Under the pieces are notes generated by a model, which worked only from the letters and a program-made list of their open reading frames with translations, was not told the DNA's origin and did no database searches. The position numbers were made by a program, and so were the translations under genes. A stretch of 64,000 nucleotides of DNA from positions 1 to 64,000 of IMG/VR virus record IMGVR_UViG_3300035156_000206, one strand, 5' to 3'. Positions 1 through 26,159 of the stretch are shown here, in pieces (the first letter of the stretch is position 1; each line of letters begins with the position of its first letter).

Positions 1-6
1 CCAGGG

Positions 7-172
7 GGGTCGGGGCCCGGGGGGGTCGGGCGGTAGTTATTATGGGGCGGGTCGGGGTCGGGGGATGTACCGGAAGTTGGTGGTCGGGAAGGGGGGTCGG
101 GTCGGGGCCTTGTTGACCGGGGTCGGGTCGGGGGCTGGAGTTCCAATGACCAGTCGGGGTCGGGGGGGTCGG
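7..172 (+). repeat. Cluster of about 10 GGGTCGG heptamers, G-quadruplex-capable
   Basis: GGGTCGG at about 7, 23, 49, 55, 94, 99, 120, 125, 157, 166. Confidence 0.9.
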
Positions 173-426
173 ACAGTGAAGCTATTCATCCCACAGACGG
201 CTAACATGAACCTCAACTCGCCGAGTGTGATCTCATTGCCACCATCGGGCTCGGCATCGTACAGGAAGCGATAGACCTCTTCCTTATCTTCTTGTGTGGC
301 TTTGAAGTCTGTGAAGACATAGAGGATGTCTTCAAGAGCATGGTTAGGAAGTTGGTAAAGCTTCATGCTGTTGGAAAGAAGCTCACCAATCTTCTGGGAC
401 ATCAACGCAATGCGATGAGTGGTCAT
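40..426 (-). CDS. Hypothetical protein with Pro-rich C-terminus encoded by the GGGTCGG repeats
   Basis: 128-aa ORF; GGAG RBS; TTGACT-17-TATAAT promoter at 454-482. Confidence 0.65.
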   Translation of the reverse strand: MTTHRIALMSQKIGELLSNSMKLYQLPNHALEDILYVFTDFKATQEDKEEVYRFLYDAEPDGGNEITLGELRFMLAVCGMNSFTVRPPRPRLVIGTPAPDPTPVNKAPTRPPFPTTNFRYIPRPRPAP

Positions 427-8645: not shown

Positions 8646-8661
8646 GCACTACTCCTTAAAA

Positions 8662-9059
8662 TGGGTCCCCCTTTCGATGACAGGGACTAGTGAACCTTTC
8701 GGCTCAGTAGCGGGGGATTATTTCAACCCTGCAAAGTTAGTTAGGCGTAAGCCGCTACTTTGAATTGTGAGTCGTTTGCATTTACATGCTTGCATCTTTT
8801 CGCCTTACGGCCGAGGATCGCTTCTCGTGTTGTCAACCTACGGTTATCTCACCACGTCGAAACCAGGTCGCCCCCATCAGCTGCACTTTCAGGTCTATGT
8901 CTGGTGTACCAGTCCTGAGAATTGATGTTATCTCATCTTCGAAAGCGCAGTTGGTGGAGGCGGCGGGAATCGAACCCGCGTCCGCAATGCCTTCACTTTG
9001 GCATCTGGATAGGTCTTACCCTACCCCACAACAATGTATCCGTTGATTTCTCAACTGAT
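8662..9059 (-). ncRNA. ssrA: Circularly permuted (two-piece) tmRNA
   Basis: acceptor piece ending GGTTCGATTCCCGCCGCCTCCACCA at 8952 is transcribed before GGGGGCGACCTGGTTTCGAC at 8875; tag ANDSQFKVAAYA at 8741-8779; outer ends approximate. Confidence 0.9.
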
Positions 9060-17658: not shown

Positions 17659-17873
17659 GATAGTTTCTCGCTTTCTTGGTTATTCGCATCAGCATTATTG
17701 CTTCAGTCGATATATTCATTATACTTACTTTTCATCTTTTGTCAACAGTTTCTTTTTCGCTGCCACCGGTTCCTGTTAACACTTCTTCCCAACCGATGAG
17801 ATCAGTATACTTGCTTTTCAACTAAAGTCAACGGCATTCCCTTGTTGACTTCTATGGGAAGCCTCCGTATAAT

Positions 17874-17957
17874 AGACTTACCGGTCCCTAGGAGAGAGGT
17901 GGTATGGGGATTTGGTTCAGGCGGGGGAACCTGGACCAAGGACCACGGCCTAGGTGA
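17874..17957 (+). ncRNA. Three-copy small RNA/peptide cassette, copy C
   Basis: TTGACT-17-TATAAT then AGACTTACCG-N6-AGGAGAG-N4-GGTATGGGGATTTGGTTC; 3' end uncertain. Confidence 0.55.
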
Positions 17958-18029
17958 GGTTGCACCAGGACCAAGGTGCTGGCCTATGTTCAACCTGAGC
18001 CAGGACCTAGTGGTGCAGGCTCAAACCAT

Positions 18030-18385
18030 GGTCCTCCACAAATGCCCGACCCCCTGGTCCTACCAGAACCAAGATCCACAATTGGGTTTTGACAACCTGA
18101 AACTAGGTCCTCCACAAATGCCCGACCCCCCTGTACCAAACCACAATTGGGATTTTGAAGACCAAACCACAATTGGGAAAACATGGTACATTGCAATTGG
18201 CCAACCCCCTGCACCAAACCACAATTGGTCAAATGGCACAATTCCACAATTGGGATTTTGGTCGATTTCAAATGGGGGTGGACGGACCGGTCGACAATTG
18301 ACAACTGGTTGTTTCAGAACCACAACAGGAGGATGAGGTACAACTAGGGATGGCACGATATGAACGAACCAGATCCACAAATGGG
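18030..18385. repeat. Iteron-like direct repeats, putative origin or packaging/terminal signal
   Basis: CCACAATTGG at 18076, 18141, 18167, 18219, 18244; 24-bp GGTCCTCCACAAATGCCCGACCCC at 18030 and 18106. Confidence 0.85.
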
Positions 18386-18460
18386 GAATTAGGAAATCAG
18401 AATGGGACACGCAACATGACTTGTGAACCAAGACCATGGTGGTTTGAAACTAGACTGGTA

Positions 18461-18538
18461 GGGGTCGGGGGGTGAGCCTACTGAAATACAGGGGGGTCGG
18501 GGGGGTACGTAATTGCGCCTAACCACGGGGGTCGGGGG
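18461..18538 (+). repeat. Second GGGTCGG/G-tract cluster
   Basis: GGGTCGG at 18462, 18494, 18529 within long G runs. Confidence 0.85.
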
Positions 18539-18708
18539 CCTAGTATTTGGTGTTGGTACGAATCACTTGTCTCTTTCAATCTTGTGCTCGTACCAACTTG
18601 ACATCAACACCGACATATTATTCCAATCATCTAGCGGGTGGTAGGTACCGGACATCAGCGCATATTGAATTAACGTGCTGCATCTAGCCCATATGTTGAT
18701 GTCTGGTA

Positions 18709-18942: not shown

Positions 18943-19132
18943 GGTGGTACTCCTTCAGGGGTTAAATAACAGGGTTTGGGTTATCTACCAGTGGAGGGAA
19001 CGAACGTGTTCTTCCTCCACCGCTAAGTAACCATTCTACTTACTACAAAAACAAAAGTCAAGGAAAACATCGAGTACCTGTTGATTAAAATCAAAATTTA
19101 CTGTAATAAACATTTCCTCTCGGAAACATCCT

Positions 19133-19582
19133 TCAGGCCATCATACCTTGACGCTTCATGTACTTAGTAACAAGCACAATGTGTTTACACGCACCTGGTA
19201 TTGCATCTCCCGGGTTCAAAGGAGCCCTCTTGGGCCTCTGCCTCAAATGGTCCGGGACAGGCACATACTTCGGTCTGTGCATTCCGAACAGCGCATGCAC
19301 CTTTCGGTTTGCCTCGCTGAACCAGAACCTAAAACTAGGACAATTGCATCGGACCACAACATTGTTCTCCTCACTGACAGGTCCTTCGACCTGGTTGAAT
19401 TGAACAACGACCTTATAGACCTTCTTGTCCGGAGATGCTACCTCCGCCCGAACAATCTTGGTCTTCACACCAAGCATGTCCGTAACATGAAAATCAAATA
19501 TGGCATAATCCTCAATCACCGCCCTATTAAATACTCCAGGCTGCAACGCTTCACCGCCTGCAACAAGATCACTAAACTTCAT
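19133..19582 (-). CDS. SWIM zinc-finger protein
   Basis: CNC...CKH pattern (VRCNCPSF...GACKHIV); promoter near 19618-19646. Confidence 0.75.
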   Translation of the reverse strand: MKFSDLVAGGEALQPGVFNRAVIEDYAIFDFHVTDMLGVKTKIVRAEVASPDKKVYKVVVQFNQVEGPVSEENNVVVRCNCPSFRFWFSEANRKVHALFGMHRPKYVPVPDHLRQRPKRAPLNPGDAIPGACKHIVLVTKYMKRQGMMA

Positions 19583-19714
19583 CTGTTCACCTGCTAATGT
19601 AATACACTATGATGATCATTATACTGATTTCTTGCTTAAAGTCAACGCTGTTCTCTTAAAAACCTAACTAATATACAATACGAATTCTCAATCGAAATTT
19701 GGAACCATACTATT

Positions 19715-20059
19715 ATGATAACCACCTCCCCGACTACCATCGATCGCTTCACAGCCATTGCAACAGAAGTCATCCAGACACTTACCAACACAGGCGTCCT
19801 CCGACTCCTTAAAGATGCGGCTGGGACCGACCCCCTAGATGCAACATCTGCTGACGGCCAACGCATCATCCGAGCCATGGCCACTAAGATCTATGATGGT
19901 GCAATCAAAGATATGAACCAACATCTCGCCCTGGACCAACCACAACCGTCCGACCCCGATGCAGACCTAATCGCCAAACAAGAACTGGACCGACAGTGGC
20001 AAGAGCAACAAGCACTACTGGGCCCCAAGCCAGGACCGGCGCGCCGGACTATCAGCTAA
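19715..20059 (+). CDS. Hypothetical protein
   Basis: 114-aa ORF. Confidence 0.65.
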   Translation: MITTSPTTIDRFTAIATEVIQTLTNTGVLRLLKDAAGTDPLDATSADGQRIIRAMATKIYDGAIKDMNQHLALDQPQPSDPDADLIAKQELDRQWQEQQALLGPKPGPARRTIS

Positions 20060-20140
20060 TAAACCTCGTTGACAAATCTGTGTAATCCTCTCTATAATAG
20101 AATTAATCGATCGGCGAGATTAATTCCATAGGGACTGACT

Positions 20141-20980
20141 ATGCATCACAATTACGAAGAACCCAGCGTCACAGCGGAACACATTGTTCAGGCCAAAAAC
20201 CTGAACATCCTTCCACTGACCATGGAACAAGCAATTATCATCCAAGGCTTCACAGGCCTCAATATCGTACCACCAGAACTGTTCGACCAGGACAAAGCCG
20301 AGCGCCTGAACGGTGGCATCGAGTTCGACACGACCCAGACACAATACCGAGAAGACTTCCTCCGGCTGGTACGTGGCGTCTACCAGAATGAAATGGACGA
20401 CTACCCAGCACTGACCAAAATGGTCTACCGCCTCATCGAACAGAAAATGGACAACGATCCATTTGCCTGCTGGGACACACGGGTCGACATCCTGATCGCA
20501 ACACACCTGAACCACAAGACCCAGGCATCCCTGCGCGTCTCCATTGAACTGGAACACCAAGGTACTATCGAGTTCACAGAACGCCCAGGGCCAACTCCAC
20601 AAACATGGATTGTGATCAACAGGCCCGATCCTACCGCAGACCAACTGAACGTCGCCATCACCAATGTCGTCGAACAGATGCATGGCGACCAGCCACTGTC
20701 GGGGACATACGAAATGATCCTCCCCATGAGCCTTCCGACCCGGGTGGAACAATCCTTCTCCGACCAGGTAAAGGCCCTGTACAAATTGGACAGCCTCGAG
20801 ATCACCAGGGGTCGGTTCACAAGGCACCAAACCAAGTTGACATTGACCAAGGGGTCGGACCTGGGAATTAACGACGGGGGGTCGGGGGCACTGGAACCAG
20901 CATTCACCGGTACCCTCAATGAGGTGCGCATCGCCTCCCAGGGTCGGGAGCACGATGAGCGAGGTTGGCAGCCTAAGTAA
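20141..20980 (+). CDS. Hypothetical protein
   Basis: 279 aa; TTGACA-18-TATAAT at 20069-20098. Confidence 0.8.
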   Translation: MHHNYEEPSVTAEHIVQAKNLNILPLTMEQAIIIQGFTGLNIVPPELFDQDKAERLNGGIEFDTTQTQYREDFLRLVRGVYQNEMDDYPALTKMVYRLIEQKMDNDPFACWDTRVDILIATHLNHKTQASLRVSIELEHQGTIEFTERPGPTPQTWIVINRPDPTADQLNVAITNVVEQMHGDQPLSGTYEMILPMSLPTRVEQSFSDQVKALYKLDSLEITRGRFTRHQTKLTLTKGSDLGINDGGSGALEPAFTGTLNEVRIASQGREHDERGWQPK

Positions 20981-21932
20981 TCATCGGCAGTAGGTTGAAG
21001 AGGTCGGAGAACAGGCCGTGAATGTTCTGGACTATGTACTGTGTGTCGGATCCATGGTACGAGGTACAGTTCATAGCCACGGCCTGTCGGGCCTCCATCC
21101 TAAGGGTCGGGTCGTACTTCCACATTCTGATGATTCGGAAGCCAGACCGTATGGCGATATGGTTCAGCTCCGACTTGCCAAGGTTGCAGATGTCCACCAC
21201 GTACACATTGGCGGGGTCGGACGGGTACTGGGCACAATACATCACAGCAACATTCTCCAACAAACCTGGTAATGGATCGTGACCTAAAAAGATCGACCAA
21301 CCACACCAGTCCGACCCATACACCTCATCAGGCCTCCATGGTAGATCACTATGGGCATAGGTCGCGCGCCACTTCAACCATTCAGGATGGTCCCTCAATC
21401 CCAGGCGCGATACAAACTTCACAGCCTCCATGAACGGCCTGTACCCGACCCCCTTGGGGAACGGAACCAAGTTGTCGATATTTCCCAGGGCCGACGGCCT
21501 ATGTTGCTTCTTCTGTCCCAAGAACTTAACCCAACCTTCCCATTCATCCTTATAGTACCTATCCGGTTGCTTCGGGATCCTATGGGGTCGGGGGGACAGA
21601 TCCTTATGAGCCTCATGGTACTGATCCATGGTCAATAGGTTCAATGGTGCAATAAGGTCCTTAGCCTCTTGGTACGACATAAAGGTTGTACCTAACCAAT
21701 CTGGCCAACCCGTCCACCGCTCCTTATAGGCTAGGTCAGGACGCTTGGGAATGTCCCCAGGCAACTTCGGACCATCACAGAACTGTTCCCAATCCTTTTG
21801 GTTCTCCAGACCTTGCCTGTGCACATATTGTAGGGCGAGCCTATACGAACGGTGCCTAAGTTTTGGTCGTCCCGGACCAGTTTGTTTCTTAGGTCTTCCA
21901 GCCTTAACAATTCGTTCCTTGGTGTTTTCCAC
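20973..21932 (-). CDS. AT-hook-like plus integrase-repeat-unit DNA-binding protein
   Basis: two GRP motifs; three repeats Y/F..A...L.L....W...P..PD..Y...W.GW..L G; TAAATA at 21970-21975. Confidence 0.8.
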   Translation of the reverse strand: MENTKERIVKAGRPKKQTGPGRPKLRHRSYRLALQYVHRQGLENQKDWEQFCDGPKLPGDIPKRPDLAYKERWTGWPDWLGTTFMSYQEAKDLIAPLNLLTMDQYHEAHKDLSPRPHRIPKQPDRYYKDEWEGWVKFLGQKKQHRPSALGNIDNLVPFPKGVGYRPFMEAVKFVSRLGLRDHPEWLKWRATYAHSDLPWRPDEVYGSDWCGWSIFLGHDPLPGLLENVAVMYCAQYPSDPANVYVVDICNLGKSELNHIAIRSGFRIIRMWKYDPTLRMEARQAVAMNCTSYHGSDTQYIVQNIHGLFSDLFNLLPMIT

Positions 21933-22127
21933 TTTTACCCCTGCTACGGTTACTGTTGTACATACGGGCTATTTATTGTGGACAAAATGTCTGGATTTGT
22001 ACTATAATGAACAATGGGTTAGGTTGTCCCCACTATACTGGTTTTTCGGCAACTTTTCAACAAATCTTCTTGACTGGTTGCAGCTATGTGTTGTACGTTA
22101 ATCGTTTTGTCTCTTTTGGGGAGTATC

Positions 22128-22337
22128 ATGGGTTCTGGTTTCTTGGATGGGTTGATGCGTGACTTGTTGATAAGTTTGCTAGCGGTTGTGTTCGCGGTTG
22201 GGTTATTGAGTGCAGGCGGTATGTATCTCTACATGAGGAGTTCTATCGATACGCCAGAGGTAGCTGCTAGTAAGTTGGCTAAGGAGCGTGCTCGTGTTAT
22301 GGAGGAATGTATTAAGGCTCGTATGGTGTGTAAGTAA
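22128..22337 (+). CDS. Small membrane protein, C-x5-VC family
   Basis: TM helix then CIKARMVC. Confidence 0.7.
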   Translation: MGSGFLDGLMRDLLISLLAVVFAVGLLSAGGMYLYMRSSIDTPEVAASKLAKERARVMEECIKARMVCK

Positions 22338-22401
22338 GACTGCTTGTCAGCCATGCGGGGGATATTGTATAATAAAGAGTTGATCTCAAAGGGAAGCTGA
22401 T

Positions 22402-23370
22402 ATGAACTGGTTGTTTGTAGGTGGTATGTTTGATGATGTAGGTGGTCGTGCTTCTGGTTACTTTGGGAAGTTGTGGCAGGCTGTGGCTGCTCTTTATCCT
22501 GGTGCTAATACGTTCGTGGTCAATGGGGGCAAGTTTAGTAAGTTGGCTGACTTGGCTACTTATAAGGCGACGCATATTGTATGGATGGTTGATGTGTCCA
22601 ATGAGTATGAGAAGTTGTTGCCTTCTATTATGGAGGCTAATCCTGGTGCTGTATTGATTCAGTCCAAATCGAACATTGGTGGGAGGTATAGTAGGGAGCA
22701 GTTGTTTGCGAGAATGCGTGCTTCTGGTGCCGAGATGTTGATTGAGTTTGATCGGGGTTGTGTTGGGCATATTACGGCTGGGTTGTTGTCTGTTAGTGGG
22801 AGGTACATTGGATACTCTGGTAGTGACATTGGGAATCTGGCTGCTGATATTGGTATTGAGGTAGATCGGATTGGGAGTTTGTTGTACCCATTGCGTAGGG
22901 AGAAGAAGTTGTTGCCTGTAAAGGATCATCCTGGTGCGTTTGGTGTTGTGCGGAAGAACCATGTGCATGAGGGGGTTGATTTGTATGGGGAGGTTGGGGA
23001 AAGTGTTGATGCGATGGAGACTGGGATTGTAGTTGGTCTTTATCAGTTCACAGGGGAGGATGTTGGTAGTCCTTGGTGGAATGATACATTTTGTGTTTTG
23101 GTTGCAGGGGAAAGTGGTGTCATCAATTATGGTGAGATACATCCTTGGTCTCCTGATTGGGTTAAGGTTGGTGACACAATTGAGAGGGGTGCGCAAGTTG
23201 GTACATTGCTGAGCGTCTTGAAGAAGGACAAGGGGAAGCCGATGACTATGTTGCATATTGAGAGGTATGTGATTGGGACAAAGCGGCATATTGATTCATG
23301 GGATTTGGACAAGGTGTGGCCGGCGAAGTTGCTGGACCCGACTGTCTTGTTAAGGAGTGCCATGTTATGA
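22402..23370 (+). CDS. M23-family peptidase with unknown N-terminal domain
   Basis: HEGVD (HxxxD) and LHIE (HxE variant) motifs in the C-terminal half. Confidence 0.8.
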   Translation: MNWLFVGGMFDDVGGRASGYFGKLWQAVAALYPGANTFVVNGGKFSKLADLATYKATHIVWMVDVSNEYEKLLPSIMEANPGAVLIQSKSNIGGRYSREQLFARMRASGAEMLIEFDRGCVGHITAGLLSVSGRYIGYSGSDIGNLAADIGIEVDRIGSLLYPLRREKKLLPVKDHPGAFGVVRKNHVHEGVDLYGEVGESVDAMETGIVVGLYQFTGEDVGSPWWNDTFCVLVAGESGVINYGEIHPWSPDWVKVGDTIERGAQVGTLLSVLKKDKGKPMTMLHIERYVIGTKRHIDSWDLDKVWPAKLLDPTVLLRSAML

Positions 23371-24245
23371 AAACTGTAGCTATTATTGGGGCTCGTGGGG
23401 TTGTATCTACGATGTTGCAGGCTAAGTTGGCTGATGACCCGGAAATTGTGGTTGCTGTTGTTGAGACTTCCTTGTTCATGTTGGCTCCCAATCCAAGGAT
23501 GGCATTAGCAGGTGCAGACTTGGTGGTTGTATGTACTGAGGAGGCTTTAAGCAGGGAAGTTGTTGCCAAAATCGATCCTGATATGGCTATTTTGGACATT
23601 AGTCCTGCGTTCAGGTGCGATTCTGAATGGGTATATGGGATGTCTACGTTGATGGGGACGAATCAGCTGATAAATGGGGCGAAGCGAGTGGCGAATCCTG
23701 GTTGTATGGCGACTGCTGCCATCTTGATTCTGCAGCCATTGGTTGAGGAGGAGTTGGTTGGTACATTTGATCCTTTGTATCTGGATGCGATGATTGGTTA
23801 TTCGGCTGGTGGTCGCAAGATGATTGCGAAGTATCAGGCTGGGGTTGCGATGAAGAAGCCACCATTTGAAATCATGACTAGTCTGGTTGAAGCGCACCCC
23901 CATGTTGGTGAGATCAAGCATGTTACTGGGTTGAGGGGTGATGTGGTATTGGCTCCGAAGATTGGTACCTACTTTAGTGGTATTCGGATGTCGATTATGG
24001 TACCAAGGACGTATGCTCCGTTCTTGTTGGGGATGTACAATTTCGCTTATGCTGGTACCGACATTGTGGTTGAGAACGACAACCCGAAGAAGATATGTGC
24101 TGATGAGATGGAGGGGAAGCCTGGAGCGATCATTCGGGTTTATCAGCATGGGGAATCGTGCCTTGTTGTGTGTACCATGGACAATTTGTTTAAGGGTGCA
24201 GTTGACACAGCCTATGAGAACATTGGGTTGATGTTAGGGATGTAA
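23367..24245 (+). CDS. argC: N-acetyl-gamma-glutamyl-phosphate reductase-like (ArgC/ASADH family)
   Basis: VAIIGARG Rossmann start, RVANPGC catalytic Cys, GYSAGG, HPHVGEI, DNLFKGA. Confidence 0.8.
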   Translation: MKTVAIIGARGVVSTMLQAKLADDPEIVVAVVETSLFMLAPNPRMALAGADLVVVCTEEALSREVVAKIDPDMAILDISPAFRCDSEWVYGMSTLMGTNQLINGAKRVANPGCMATAAILILQPLVEEELVGTFDPLYLDAMIGYSAGGRKMIAKYQAGVAMKKPPFEIMTSLVEAHPHVGEIKHVTGLRGDVVLAPKIGTYFSGIRMSIMVPRTYAPFLLGMYNFAYAGTDIVVENDNPKKICADEMEGKPGAIIRVYQHGESCLVVCTMDNLFKGAVDTAYENIGLMLGM

Positions 24246-24291
24246 GGCTGATGGTGTAGCTGCTACCTCTACCGTTATGGATGTTGTGCTA

Positions 24292-24297
24292 TAAATA
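24292..24297 (+). promoter_or_regulatory. Late promoter TAAATA
   Basis: CTATAAATAC 27 nt upstream of the fibre gene. Confidence 0.7.
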
Positions 24298-24324
24298 CAC
24301 AACATATAACGTGAGGTAGAACAA

Positions 24325-25428
24325 ATGCCAGGAATTCAATACCATATCAAATACACGGACCCGTCGATTCCAGGAAAGACGCCGTTCGTTATTGAACCAA
24401 ATACAACAAATGGGCCATTGAGCCCAATCACAGCCGTGCCTGACCTGAATGCAACGTCATACAACACGTCTGTTACTTTGCCAGGCATGGGGCTGATCCA
24501 ATATGGTGAGCGTGTTGATGAAGCAATCGTTCACATCCTTGAGAATTTTGCTAGTGCTGGTGTTCCACCTGTTGCCCCAACTGTTGGGCAATTGTGGTTC
24601 GACTATTCTGTTCGTCTTCTGAAGGTGTATTCGCACAACGGGACAACTGGTGTGTGGAACTTCGTAGGTGACAATGGTACTGGTGGTGCTGTTACGGCAG
24701 CCATTGCAGCCAAAGTTGCTCGTGCAGGTGACACCATGACTGGTTTCTTGACACTCAATGCTGATCCAACATCACCACTCCATGCTGCCACAAAGCAGTA
24801 TATCGACAACAAGGCTATGACTCCTGGTCCAGCCGGTCCTCAAGGGCCAGCAGGATTGAATAGTACTGTTCCTGGTCCTCAAGGTCCAGCTGGTGCTAAT
24901 GGGGCGAACGGCGCTAATGGGGCAACTGGTGCAACCGGACCTCAAGGGCCACAGGGACCTCAAGGACCACAAGGCCCGCAGGGACCTCAAGGTGTTACGG
25001 GAGCAACTGGTGCGACTGGTGCAGCATCATTTGTTCCTGGCCCACAAGGTCCTCAGGGAGCAACTGGTGCGACGGGTGCAACCGGAGCAGCTGGTCCTGT
25101 TCCAACTTTGGTTGCTAGTGGATCGATTGCCACCAACTTCAGCTCAACAGCTGCGGCTCGTATTCTGATTGATACCGGCGTCGACATGGGTGGTGCGTGG
25201 AACGATGCATCAACGGAAGTTTGGCATGCAAATGCTACCATCTCTGGTGGTTTTTCGAGTGGTGGTGGTTGCTACGGAGTTGGGCTAGCAAGAATAGGTC
25301 ACTTGGATGGTCTTGGTGCAGGGTATGCGGATGGTCGCATCTACATCGTATTCGAGTGGGCACGATCGGGTGGTAGTGGATCGTTAACAGCAACATCAGT
25401 TTCATGGAAATTAACAAAGGTATCATAA
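24325..25428 (+). CDS. Collagen-like tail fibre/baseplate-associated protein
   Basis: YGE...HILENFA...GQLWFD N-terminus; HAATKQYID; long Gly-X-Y run. Confidence 0.85.
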
Positions 25429-25622
25429 TGAAAGTAGATTACTTTAATATGGATGAAGAGGGAAACATGGTAGTTCGGCACGTTGAGCTACCAGATCACT
25501 TGTTGACGAAGACTTATGCCACAGCGATGTTGGCTAAGTTTGACGATCCTCAAGATGCGTATGAGGCTATGCGCATTGAGCGTGAAGCGGCAATGGTCGA
25601 TGTTGATCCGGTCGTAAAATAG
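25428..25622 (+). CDS. Hypothetical protein
   Basis: TAATG overlap; 64 aa. Confidence 0.6.
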   Translation: MKVDYFNMDEEGNMVVRHVELPDHLLTKTYATAMLAKFDDPQDAYEAMRIEREAAMVDVDPVVK

Positions 25623-25678
25623 TTGTTGACATTGTTGGTGAGAAGTTCGATCATGATGTTTTCCACTAGGAGGTTGTT

Positions 25679-25738
25679 ATGACGTTTCTCATCATCGCTG
25701 GTTTGGTAGGCTACATTGTCTACCTGAAGACCAAGTAA
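25679..25738 (+). CDS. 19-aa hydrophobic peptide
   Basis: MTFLIIAGLVGYIVYLKTK; AGGAGG RBS; hairpin terminator follows. Confidence 0.45.
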   Translation: MTFLIIAGLVGYIVYLKTK

Positions 25739-25798
25739 TAGCAGGTAAGGAGGCCTTGAGCCTCCTTTTTTATGTGTGGAGTTTTAGGAATGTGTCCA

Positions 25799-25999
25799 AT
25801 GGTAGATAGATACACGCTCTTTGGGTTGGTTTGCATTACTGCCTTGGGCATAACTGGGATATTCGTGATGGACTATGTATCAAATGGTCAACGAACTCGT
25901 GTGGAACGGATCATGGCTATTGCGGTCGAATGTTCAAAACTGGAAATTGTGTGCGTCATTGAGGAGAAGAAGGATGAACAAGGAACAAAAGGAAAATGA
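25799..25999 (+). CDS. Small membrane protein, C-x5-VC family
   Basis: TM helix then CSKLEIVC. Confidence 0.7.
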   Translation: MVDRYTLFGLVCITALGITGIFVMDYVSNGQRTRVERIMAIAVECSKLEIVCVIEEKKDEQGTKGK

Positions 26000-26159
26000 G
26001 AACCTAATGGGTACGGTCATTGGCGCTATGTTGGTGGTTGCATTTCTGGCAATAGCCCTTGTGCCTGTTGACAACACTGCAAAGGTGGATACCAAAATGA
26101 AGGTGTTCATGTTGAAGTGCAAAGAGATGAACATGGTCTGTACACCAAAGCCAAAATGA
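25974..26159 (+). CDS. Small membrane protein, C-x5-VC family
   Basis: TM helix then CKEMNMVC. Confidence 0.7.
   Translation: MNKEQKENENLMGTVIGAMLVVAFLAIALVPVDNTAKVDTKMKVFMLKCKEMNMVCTPKPK

What the first reader, a model, noticed from the sequence alone, without database searches (positions are those of the whole stretch)
19660..24300. Sharp local strand-composition flip near 21.95 kb, independent of coding strand
Seen: plus-strand genes at 19.7-20.9 kb are C/A-rich (19741-19800: 21 C, 10 G) while plus-strand genes at 22.4-24.2 kb are extremely G/T-rich (22981-23040: 26 G, 3 C); the bias fades within a few kb each way. Established: a C-to-G skew switch marks bidirectional origins. Inference: the strong but short-range bias suggests persistent single-strandedness or special replication here.
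Basis: partly seen in the sequence, partly recalled or inferred. Interest (0 to 1): 0.6.

Follow-up and report, generated by a model that had tools for sequence, protein, structure and literature searches.

The report
Conserved strand-composition flip in jumbo phages
A 292-kb phage genome has one spot where the DNA strand switches abruptly from A/C-rich to G/T-rich for a few kb each side; the same switch occurs at the matching spot in nine related phage genomes and contigs, so it looks like the wear mark of a fixed site where DNA synthesis or end-processing starts, not a borrowed gene or an assembly error.

Summary
The window is the first 64 kb of a 291,967-bp jumbo-phage contig from a biocrust metagenome.

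- **Uniqueness:** only 19.0-20.8 kb (plus strand A/C-rich) and 21.95-24.26 kb (G/T-rich, GC skew up to +0.63), plus a weaker 25.1-26.1 kb stretch, exceed |GC skew| 0.2. The flip score peaks once, at 21.8 kb (z=8.1).
- **Nature of the bias:** it is strongest at third codon positions (84% G/T against 50.6 ± 5.6%). It affects every amino acid and intergenic DNA, and on the left it ignores the coding strand.
- **Not acquired, not an artefact:** bacterial homologues of the skewed genes lack the bias, and an independent assembly spans the switch.
- **Conservation:** six syntenic relatives carry the same flip at the 5' end of the same conserved gene, beside a conserved CCGACCC motif array. Distant cultured relatives (XacN1, Xoo-sp13, RAS14) have equivalent flips. 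In XacN1 both flips lie within 0.33 kb of its two terminal-repeat boundaries.
- **Polarity:** on both sides the strand whose 5' end points at the centre has lost C and A. This fits outward strand-displacement synthesis.
- **Best reading:** a locus-anchored mutational footprint of an initiation or end-processing site, probably at the terminal-repeat boundary.

The parts
19009..20836 (.). Left block: plus strand A/C-rich (A .30, C .30, G .19, T .21)
   Evidence: Change points and base frequencies; 150-nt profile. It spans one minus-strand and two plus-strand genes with the same plus-strand bias.
19133..19582 (-). Gene, 149 aa, C-x-C...C-x-H motif (SWIM-like, below threshold); coding-strand third-position G+T 67%
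   Evidence: phrog_18980 E=1e-5; codon-position counts; distant paralogue at 186.5 kb; SWIM E=0.23 only.
19715..20059 (+). Gene, 114 aa, no known family; coding-strand third-position G+T only 32%
20141..20980 (+). Gene, 279 aa, behind a 12/12 sigma-70 consensus promoter (20069-20098); third-position G+T 38%. Its last ~145 nt are G-rich and carry four GGGTCGG motifs.
   Evidence: phrog_13999 E=1.4e-6 on the plus-strand frame and none on the antisense ORF; promoter; counts; motifs.
20973..21932 (-). Conserved 'middle' gene (P0121, 319 aa): three Trp-rich INT_rpt-like repeats plus an alpha/beta C-terminal domain. Nearly neutral composition. It marks the flip in seven genomes.
   Evidence: Pfam INT_rpt below cut-off; homologues at 40-78% identity, always with the flip at the gene's 5' end; C-terminal fold nearest GIY-YIG nucleases at only Z 4.2-4.8.
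21933..22127 (.). Switch region: intergenic, T-rich. C frequency drops from 0.286 to 0.129 at 21,948. Holds overlapping divergent promoters (+ at 21979-22008; - at 22060-22032).
   Evidence: Change point; promoter scan; both promoters and the middle gene's RBS/start are conserved in the alignment with L156, L158 and L159.
21948..24260 (.). Right block: plus strand G/T-rich (GC skew +0.26 to +0.63 per 150 nt)
22128..22337 (+). Small hydrophobic protein gene, third-position G+T 79%
22402..23370 (+). Fusion protein with a C-terminal M23-peptidase-like domain; third position G129 C26 A25 T143 (84% G+T)
   Evidence: Pfam PF01551 E=5e-5, below cut-off; counts; full-length homologues; amino-acid composition shifted towards G/T-coded residues (0.286 against 0.234 ± 0.020).
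23367..24245 (+). ArgC-like semialdehyde dehydrogenase gene, third-position G+T 77%
   Evidence: PF22698 and PF01118; TIGR01851 E=3e-37, below cut-off; counts.
24325..25428 (+). Collagen-repeat (tail-fibre-like) gene that interrupts the skew; paralogue at 106,538-107,263
   Evidence: PF01391; third-position GC skew 0.06; paralogue 76% identical.
25101..26100 (.). Weaker continuation of the G/T-rich bias (C .171, G .288; GC skew about +0.27)
19827..21591 (.). Array of 12 GGGTCGG/CCGACCC motifs beside the switch
   Evidence: 31 copies in 292 kb, of which 27 lie in three clusters. The array is conserved beside the flip in all six syntenic relatives (4-13 copies against 0.4-2 expected).
18030..18541 (.). 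Repeat-rich stretch behind a consensus promoter (17845-17873): five GGGTCGG motifs and about nine direct CCACAA(T/A)TGG repeats
   Evidence: Equivalent second tight motif clusters in L159 and L162. No Rfam match.

Best explanation
**What it is.** The two blocks are an in-place mutational footprint anchored to one fixed DNA site, the 21.93-22.13 kb intergenic region at the 5' end of a conserved gene. On each side, the strand whose 5' end points towards that site has lost C and A and gained T and G. This is the change that deamination of exposed single strands produces (C to U, A to hypoxanthine). Repeated one-sided resynthesis could produce it too.

**Most likely cause (inferred).** In every infection cycle, DNA synthesis starts here and runs outwards in both directions. 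It peels off 2-4 kb of the 5'-ended strands before they are copied. The start could be an origin-like initiation or a nick-primed strand displacement.

**Where in the genome (inferred).** By analogy with phage XacN1, the site is probably the boundary between the long terminal repeat (the early, tRNA-bearing region to the left) and the unique region (to the right).

**Candidate machinery (inferred).** The CCGACCC motif array and the conserved repeat-containing protein next to the site are the candidate cis-sites and site-specific factor.

**Shown:** the composition, its anchoring to the locus, its conservation and its polarity. **Inferred:** single-strandedness, the synthesis start, and the terminal-repeat boundary.
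For: 1. **A mutational or composition-level bias, not translational.** All synonymous families shift to G/T endings, including TTG over CTG, AGG over CGN and AGT over TCN. Intergenic DNA is skewed as well. Third positions are hit hardest, then first and second positions and amino-acid content. GC3 stays near 0.5, so both C-to-T and A-to-G changes are needed.
2. **Strand-specific, not gene-specific.** The left block holds genes on both strands with the same plus-strand bias. In relative L159 the skewed block holds other genes and no ArgC-like gene.
3. **Not imported.** Homologues of the M23-fusion/ArgC-like pair in bacterial contigs (43-49% identity) have third-position G+T of 0.48-0.56. M23 homologues in PA5oct, RAS14 and L002 have 0.39-0.55.
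4. **Conserved at the locus.** L156, L158, L159, L160, L161 and L162 come from other samples. Their middle gene is 47-78% identical, and all flip within -170 to +185 nt of its start codon. Upstream GC skew is -0.23 to -0.69; downstream it is +0.07 to +0.23.
5. **Flanks diverge faster.** The M23-fusion protein is 51% identical in L156, where the neighbouring middle gene is 76%.
6. **Equivalent flips in cultured relatives.** RAS14 has one at 266.9 kb (z=6.7), Xoo-sp13 at 71.8 kb (z=6.8), and XacN1 at 66.2 and 318.6 kb (z=5.8 and 5.5). The XacN1 flips lie 0.2-0.33 kb from its terminal-repeat boundaries at 65,875 and 318,796 (PMC5852040). The RAS14 flip maps to the XacN1 repeat end by collinearity.
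7. **Same distance from the tRNA cluster.** 16.1 kb here, 16.5 kb in XacN1, 18.7 kb in RAS14 and 19 kb in Xoo-sp13.
8. **Read depth fits a collapsed repeat.** The Logan contig covering 17,696-24,705 has mean depth 18.3. The next contig has 11.1, and the shared 47-nt unitig at 24.7 kb has 20.5. If the depth step lies at 21,948, the left side is 2.07 times deeper.
9. **Motif kept against the bias.** The motif array is conserved beside the flip in all relatives. In G000 its G-rich form sits against the local C-rich bias, which suggests selection.
10. **Strong transcription alone is not enough.** About 45 other near-consensus sigma-70 promoters in the early region drive unskewed genes.
Against: - There is no direct measurement of single-stranded DNA, initiation or genome ends.
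- The depth argument rests on contig means; the position of the depth step is not observed.
- The left-hand gradient is not monotonic. The 1.1-kb middle gene next to the centre is nearly neutral, and the strongest left skew lies 2.2 kb away.
- The right block ends abruptly at a gene boundary (24,260), which looks gene-wise. It resumes more weakly at 25.1 kb.
- No second flip is seen in this incomplete contig.
- T5 and CBB, which also have long terminal repeats, show no flip at their boundaries.
- G000 shares no detectable sequence with the XacN1 or RAS14 boundary regions, and in those phages the middle-gene homologue lies elsewhere, beside RNase H and DNA polymerase.
- The RAS14 gene strands to the right of its flip are doubtful.
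Confidence: 0.55

Rival explanations
1. A classical transcript-primed bidirectional replication origin, unrelated to genome ends. The two conserved divergent promoters would make RNAs that form R-loops on the G-rich non-template strands and prime leading strands both ways, as at T4 oriF/oriG or ColE1. The CCGACCC array would act as iterons lying partly inside the initiator's own gene, as in lambda O.
For: - Overlapping divergent promoters are conserved at the centre.
- The right block starts at the promoter and is G-rich on the non-template strand.
- An iteron-like array lies inside and 3' of the conserved gene.
- The genome-wide minimum of cumulative G-C is at 21,947, and this is the main point where gene orientation diverges.
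- XacN1 and Xoo-sp13 homologues of the middle gene sit in the replication module.
Against: - No replichore-scale third-position skew exists. The cumulative-skew minimum follows gene orientation.
- XacN1 has two such flips, both at terminal-repeat boundaries, and one of them is not between divergent genes.
- The gene nearest the leftward promoter is the least skewed.
- No AT-rich unwinding element or known initiator family was identified.
Confidence: 0.25
2. A footprint of recurrent site-specific cutting by the adjacent conserved protein, acting as a GIY-YIG-like endonuclease. Each cut would be resected and repaired over 1-3 kb, and biased repair synthesis of the resected 5'-ended strands would build up the asymmetry.
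For: - The gene sits at the flip in seven genomes.
- Block lengths match typical resection or co-conversion tracts.
- The best structural matches of its C-terminal domain are the GIY-YIG nucleases Slx1 (Z 4.8 and 4.5) and HIGLE (Z 4.2).
Against: - These Z scores are below the tool's reliability range. Pfam, Foldseek and the PDB profile search find nothing.
- The usual catalytic Arg position is not conserved in the G000 subclade (read by eye).
- Deamination of 3' tails left by ordinary 5'-to-3' resection predicts the opposite polarity.
- The XacN1-group flips lack this gene nearby.
Confidence: 0.1
3. Transcription-associated mutational asymmetry, or selection on RNA or DNA composition (C-poor messages, unstructured strands), in a few unusually expressed operons.
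For: - The right block coincides to within about 15 nt with one promoter-to-stop unit, and its coding strand is G/T-rich, the usual direction of transcription-coupled asymmetry.
- Strong promoters lie at 20069, 21979 and 22344.
Against: - Genes 19715-20059 and 20141-20980, and their counterparts in the relatives (third-position G+T 0.23-0.37), are A/C-rich on their own coding strand.
- Dozens of other consensus-promoter genes are unskewed.
- At XacN1 318.8 kb the bias ignores gene orientation.
- No dinucleotide context points to an enzyme.
Confidence: 0.07
4. Two pieces recently acquired from a donor with extreme strand bias, or an assembly chimera.
For: - The blocks have sharp edges.
- The M23-fusion/ArgC-like pair occurs as a cassette in bacterial genomes.
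Against: - Homologues outside the lineage lack the bias.
- The bias is shared by syntenic relatives whose proteins have diverged to about 50%, and it covers different genes in L159.
- An independent contig spans the region, and a second sample holds identical pieces.
Confidence: 0.03

Closest known systems
GC/keto-skew switch at bacterial and plasmid replication origins
   Same: The sign change has the same polarity: the strand running 5'-to-3' away from the centre is G/T-rich. It coincides with the genome-wide minimum of cumulative G-C.
   Different: The bias lasts only 2-4 kb per side instead of a whole replichore. It is 5-10 times stronger locally (third-position G+T 0.84), and no genome-scale third-position bias accompanies it.
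Heavy-strand asymmetry of vertebrate mitochondrial DNA (strand-displacement replication)
   Same: Both C-to-T and A-to-G changes accumulate on the strand left single-stranded, giving amino-to-keto depletion at free sites of similar magnitude. This comparison rests on established knowledge, not on a test made here.
   Different: Here the asymmetry is bidirectional around one point, kb-scale, and lies in a 292-kb double-stranded DNA phage.
Direct-terminal-repeat boundaries of phage XacN1 (65,875-bp repeats; PMC5852040)
   Same: XacN1's only two strong flips lie 0.2-0.33 kb from its two repeat boundaries. The architecture matches: early/tRNA region on one side, the same distance to the tRNA cluster, and divergent genes at the repeat end.
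   Different: There is no sequence similarity between the boundary regions. The repeat in the present phage is inferred only from contig depth. The XacN1 paper does not mention skew.
R-loop-prone GC-skewed promoters (CpG-island promoters, PMC3787257; ColE1 and T4 oriF/oriG primers)
   Same: A promoter is followed by a G-rich non-template strand, here on both sides of a divergent promoter pair.
   Different: The blocks cover whole protein-coding operons. The bias is G+T rather than G alone, and on the left it runs antisense to two genes.
Lambda-type origin with iterons inside the initiator gene
   Same: A short repeated motif is arrayed inside and next to a conserved gene at the presumed initiation site.
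   Different: The motif is 7-8 nt long, spread over 1-2 kb in both orientations, with extra clusters kb away. The protein has no similarity to known initiators.

Membership tests
Bidirectional replication origin (skew-switch type) | Sign switch of GC/keto skew with the outward 5'-to-3' strand G/T-rich | tested here: met
   the switch is at 21,948, A/C-rich to the left and G/T-rich to the right.
Bidirectional replication origin (skew-switch type) | Skew persists along both replichores, independently of gene orientation | tested here: not met
   Third-position G+T in plus-strand terms is about 0.5 in every 10-kb bin outside 19-26 kb.
Bidirectional replication origin (skew-switch type) | Clustered initiator-binding repeats next to the switch | tested here: inconclusive
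   The CCGACCC/GGGTCGG array is conserved in seven genomes, but no binding protein has been shown.
Bidirectional replication origin (skew-switch type) | Initiation mapped by nascent strands or copy-number gradient | not testable with these tools
   Only contig-level depth was available.
Terminal-repeat boundary of XacN1-like jumbo phages | Two-fold read depth on the repeat side, with a step at the boundary | tested here: inconclusive
   The contig covering 17,696-24,705 has mean depth 18.3 against 11.1 next door. This fits 2.07x to the left of 21,948, but the step was not seen directly.
Terminal-repeat boundary of XacN1-like jumbo phages | Same place in the genome architecture (early/tRNA region on one side, about 16-19 kb from the tRNA cluster) | tested here: met
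Terminal-repeat boundary of XacN1-like jumbo phages | Sequence homology of the boundary region | tested here: not met
   tblastx of G000 1-45 kb against XacN1 40-80 kb and RAS14 250-290 kb gave no hit at 1e-6.
Transcription-associated mutational asymmetry | The coding (non-template) strand is G/T-rich in every affected gene | tested here: not met
   Genes 19715-20059 and 20141-20980 have coding-strand third-position G+T of 0.32 and 0.38. Counterparts in L156 and L158 have 0.23-0.37.
Horizontally acquired compositional island | Homologues in the donor lineage share the composition; relatives of the host genome lack the island | tested here: not met
   Outside homologues are unskewed. Syntenic relatives share the skew.
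GIY-YIG nuclease (for the middle gene's C-terminal domain) | Family profile match, or a clear structural match to the GIY-YIG fold | tested here: inconclusive
   No Pfam hit at E<=5. Foldseek found nothing. VIA best matches are Slx1 at Z 4.8 and 4.5 and HIGLE at Z 4.2, below the reliable range.
GIY-YIG nuclease (for the middle gene's C-terminal domain) | Conserved catalytic Tyr...Tyr/Arg/Glu/Asn set | not tested
   Only inspected by eye in alignment A3. Y30, G38, N74 and N89 are invariant. The Arg position is Ile in G000, L156 and L158.

The most novel reading that the evidence does not exclude
XacN1-like and related jumbo phages may possess a dedicated DNA site where kb-long 5'-ended strands are exposed in every cycle. 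It would be marked by a CCGACCC motif array and, in the G000 subclade, by a conserved repeat-plus-nuclease-like protein. The site could be a previously undescribed origin or a terminal-repeat-duplication mechanism. Its mutational footprint is strong enough to locate genome ends or origins from sequence alone and to speed up the evolution of the neighbouring genes.
Probability: 0.3. Interest if true: 0.8.

Novelty: new variant of a known kind. Interest (0 to 1): 0.66.

Why it matters
Replication origins and genome ends of jumbo phages are mostly unknown and hard to map.

- **A sequence-only marker.** A sharp kb-scale strand-composition flip marks one locus in ten phage genomes and contigs, and it coincides with both known terminal-repeat boundaries of XacN1. 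It could serve to locate such sites in cultured and metagenomic phages from sequence alone.
- **Local mutation pressure.** The flip shows that a local DNA transaction can push third codon positions to 84% G/T and shift protein composition. Phage genes next to such sites may therefore evolve under very different mutation pressure. This matters for codon-usage, horizontal-transfer and phylogenetic inference.
- **Testability.** XacN1, Xoo-sp13 and RAS14 are cultured, so the idea can be tested directly.

Tried and rejected
**Searches for relatives that found nothing useful**
- Megablast of 19.0-25.5 kb against phage records: no match.
- The search for related loci in viral contigs with four proteins, and in metagenome contigs with the M23-fusion protein: only distant or repeat-driven hits, no close relative. 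Close relatives were reached only through the middle gene.

**Family and RNA scans**
- PADLOC: no hits.
- Rfam over 16.5-26.5 kb: no hits.
- NCBIfam: only the ArgC-like match, below cut-off.

**Enzyme-signature test**
- Neighbouring-base context of residual C and A at third positions shows no motif, so nothing points to a context-specific deaminase.

**Paralogue test**
- The collagen-like gene compared with its copy at 107 kb shows C-to-T 25 against T-to-C 13 and A-to-G 19 against G-to-A 15. This is the right direction but weak.

**Ideas dropped**
- I first took the neutral middle gene for a recent mobile insertion. It is in fact the most conserved gene of the locus.
- Ordinary 5'-to-3' resection of a break at the centre, with deamination of the 3' tails, predicts the opposite polarity.

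**Negative controls for the flip**
- PA5oct's best flip (z=4.5) lies at convergent genes and is an ordinary coding-strand effect.
- RAS14's second flip (z=4.5, at 24.5 kb) also lies at convergent genes, but it maps to the XacN1 repeat-start boundary by collinearity, so it may be a true counterpart rather than a negative control.
- T5, CBB and SPO1 show no flip at their repeat boundaries; genome maxima are z 3.2-4.0.

**Structure and literature**
- Foldseek against the PDB and a profile search of PDB sequences gave nothing for the middle protein.
- Four literature searches found no description of such flips.

Full report
**What the window is.** The window is the first 64 kb of a 291,967-bp IMG/VR virus record. 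CheckV rates it 84% complete and it has linear ends. The source is a biocrust metagenome. The record has 29 tRNA genes and a tmRNA-like gene. Sixty-four near-consensus sigma-70 promoters are concentrated at 0-22 kb and 250-292 kb. The proteins are distantly related to those of the jumbo phages XacN1, Xoo-sp13, RAS14/CM1 and PA5oct.

- Genome-wide, 1-kb GC skew averages 0.006 ± 0.073. Only 19.0-20.5 kb, 22.0-24.5 kb and 25.0-26.5 kb exceed |0.2|.
- Likelihood change points place an A/C-rich block at 19,009-20,836 and a G/T-rich block at 21,948-24,260, where C falls to 14%.
- A flip score (G+T fraction of the 2 kb to the right minus the 2 kb to the left) has one peak, at 21,800, with z=8.1. The runner-up has z=2.3.

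**The bias acts on composition, not on translation.** Third codon positions of 22402-23370 read G129 C26 A25 T143, which is 84% G+T. The mean for 391 crude ORF genes is 50.6 ± 5.6%.
- Every amino acid shifts to G/T-ending codons. Family choice shifts too: TTG over CTG, AGG over CGN, AGT over TCN.
- Intergenic DNA is skewed as well.
- The M23-fusion protein is enriched in G/T-coded residues compared with 33 homologues (0.286 against 0.234 ± 0.020).
- GC3 stays near 0.5, so both C-to-T and A-to-G changes (amino to keto) are required.
- No neighbouring-base context is visible.

**It is independent of the coding strand.** On the left, the minus-strand gene 19133-19582 and the plus-strand genes 19715-20059 and 20141-20980 share the same plus-strand A/C richness. 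The two plus-strand genes are therefore A/C-rich on their own coding strand. PHROG hits support the assigned strands.

**It is neither an artefact nor imported.**
- An independent Logan contig (7,010 nt) of the source run spans 19,000-24,705 with no differences. A second sample from another study holds identical short pieces.
- The M23-fusion and ArgC-like genes form a conserved pair in bacterial contigs at 43-49% identity. There, third-position G+T is 0.48-0.56.
- M23 homologues in PA5oct, RAS14 and L002 have 0.39-0.55.

**The flip is conserved at this locus.** Homologues of the middle gene 20973-21932 led to six contigs from other samples.
- L156, L158 and L159 are syntenic. L160 (303 kb), L161 (315 kb) and L162 (136 kb) are large jumbo-phage contigs.
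- With the middle gene on the plus strand, all seven genomes switch from strongly A/C-rich upstream (GC skew -0.23 to -0.69) to G/T-rich downstream (+0.07 to +0.23). The change point lies within -170 to +185 nt of the start codon.
- The orthologous M23-fusion genes have third-position G+T of 0.73-0.81. Genes on the other side have 0.23-0.37.
- L159 has different genes in the skewed block, so position matters and gene identity does not.
- The middle gene itself is nearly neutral everywhere. It is much better conserved (76-78%) than the skewed M23-fusion neighbour (51%).
- The intergenic alignment conserves an overlapping divergent promoter pair.

**A conserved motif array lies beside the flip.** GGGTCGG/CCGACCC occurs 31 times in the 292 kb:
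- 10 copies in nt 1-175;
- 5 copies at 18.05-18.53 kb;
- 12 copies at 19.8-21.6 kb;
- 4 copies in the remaining 270 kb.

Every relative has 4-13 copies, against 0.4-2 expected. They lie inside and 3' of the middle gene, often with a second tight cluster 1-3 kb further on. In the window, the G-rich form lies on the plus strand at 20.8-21.6 kb, against the local bias. This suggests the motif is kept by selection.

**Distant cultured relatives show the same kind of flip.**
- RAS14 has one at 266.9 kb (z=6.7), in a 570-nt unannotated gap, with a graded bias over about 3-5 kb each side.
- Xoo-sp13 has one at 71.8 kb (z=6.8) and another across its joined record ends.
- XacN1 has exactly two, at 66.2 and 318.6 kb (z=5.8 and 5.5).

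XacN1's published 65,875-bp direct terminal repeats end at 65,875 and begin at 318,796 (PMC5852040). At the 318.8-kb boundary the bias ignores gene orientation. Collinearity maps the RAS14 flips onto the XacN1 boundaries. The distance from the flip to the tRNA cluster is 16-19 kb in all four phages.

Controls show no comparable flip. PA5oct's best flip lies at convergent genes, and T5, CBB and SPO1 have none at their repeat boundaries.

**Read depth.** The Logan contig covering 17,696-24,705 has mean depth 18.3. The adjoining 55-kb contig has 11.1. The shared 47-nt unitig at 24.7 kb has 20.5, which is about 11 from this phage plus 9-12 from a related phage. The first contig must therefore be deeper in its left part. 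If the step sits at 21,948, the left side is 2.07 times deeper, as expected for a collapsed terminal repeat. This is indirect evidence.

**Mechanism.** The polarity means that on both sides the depleted strand is the one whose 5' end faces the centre.
- Outward strand displacement from an origin or a nick fits this.
- Deamination of 3' tails after ordinary resection does not fit.
- Sense transcription fails for the left-hand plus-strand genes. About 45 other consensus promoters drive unskewed genes.

I therefore favour a locus-anchored mutational footprint of recurrent outward synthesis at a fixed site, probably the terminal-repeat boundary (confidence 0.55). The rivals are a transcript-primed origin (0.25), endonuclease-driven repair (0.10), transcription or selection (0.07), and acquisition or artefact (0.03).

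**The middle protein.** It has three INT_rpt-like repeats (below the Pfam threshold) and a confidently modelled alpha/beta C-terminal domain (pLDDT 85). The nearest structures are the GIY-YIG nucleases Slx1 and HIGLE, at only Z 4.2-4.8. That is inconclusive.

**Weak points.**
- The left gradient is not monotonic.
- The right block ends at a gene boundary.
- No second flip is visible in this incomplete contig.
- No experiment bears on single-strandedness.
- The RAS14 strand annotation to the right of its flip is doubtful.

**Novelty.** Four literature searches found no report of such flips. I rate this a new variant of a known kind, namely strand asymmetry produced by strand-specific DNA metabolism.

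Noticed in passing
window 1-175: The contig begins with about ten tandem-like copies of GGGGTCGG, forming G-quadruplex-type runs. This is the same motif that is arrayed beside the flip. The other contig end (291.5-292.0 kb) stops inside a GGCGTT tandem repeat, so both ends look like assembly breaks at repeats.
   Followed up: partly
window 17845-18541: A consensus promoter is followed by a repeat-rich stretch with about nine direct CCACAA(T/A)TGG repeats (resembling DnaA-box cores), two 25-nt exact repeats and three GGGGGTCGGGGG copies. There is no Rfam match. It could be a repeat-protein gene, a non-coding RNA or an iteron field.
   Followed up: partly
window 22402-24245; L005-L008: The M23-fusion and ArgC-like genes form a conserved two-gene cassette in bacterial genomes, often near DUF4326, DUF8336 and RecX genes and once near an integrase. 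Its function is unknown and there is no PADLOC hit.
   Followed up: partly
window 24325-25428 and G000 106,538-107,263: The collagen-repeat tail-fibre-like gene has a diverged paralogue: 76% identical over the first 254 residues, with a different C-terminal part.
   Followed up: partly
window 1-22000 and G000 250-292 kb: Forty-six of 64 near-consensus sigma-70 promoters lie here, mostly on the minus strand with 16-nt spacers, among tRNA genes and small ORFs. This looks like a host-polymerase early region. The three plus-strand promoters at the flip all have 18-nt spacers.
   Followed up: partly
window 8650-9044: ARAGORN calls a permuted tmRNA-like gene with tag peptide ANDSQFKVAAYA, near six tRNA genes (2.4-5.8 kb).
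   Followed up: no
window 24520-24888: The source run also holds a 59-kb contig of a related phage (about 87% identical over 186 nt of the collagen-like gene) at similar depth. Two related jumbo phages may therefore coexist in the sample.
   Followed up: no
L078 (RAS14 267.5-271.8 kb): Annotated plus-strand genes here have second-codon-position G+T of 0.55-0.76, which is unusual for real genes. Either the bias has reshaped these small proteins or the strand annotation is wrong.
   Followed up: no
L160, L161, L162 and G000 contig ends: All four large contigs that carry the flip end 1-30 kb from it. For G000, L160 and L161 the end is on the tRNA side. This hints at a shared hard-to-assemble or terminal region.
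   Followed up: no
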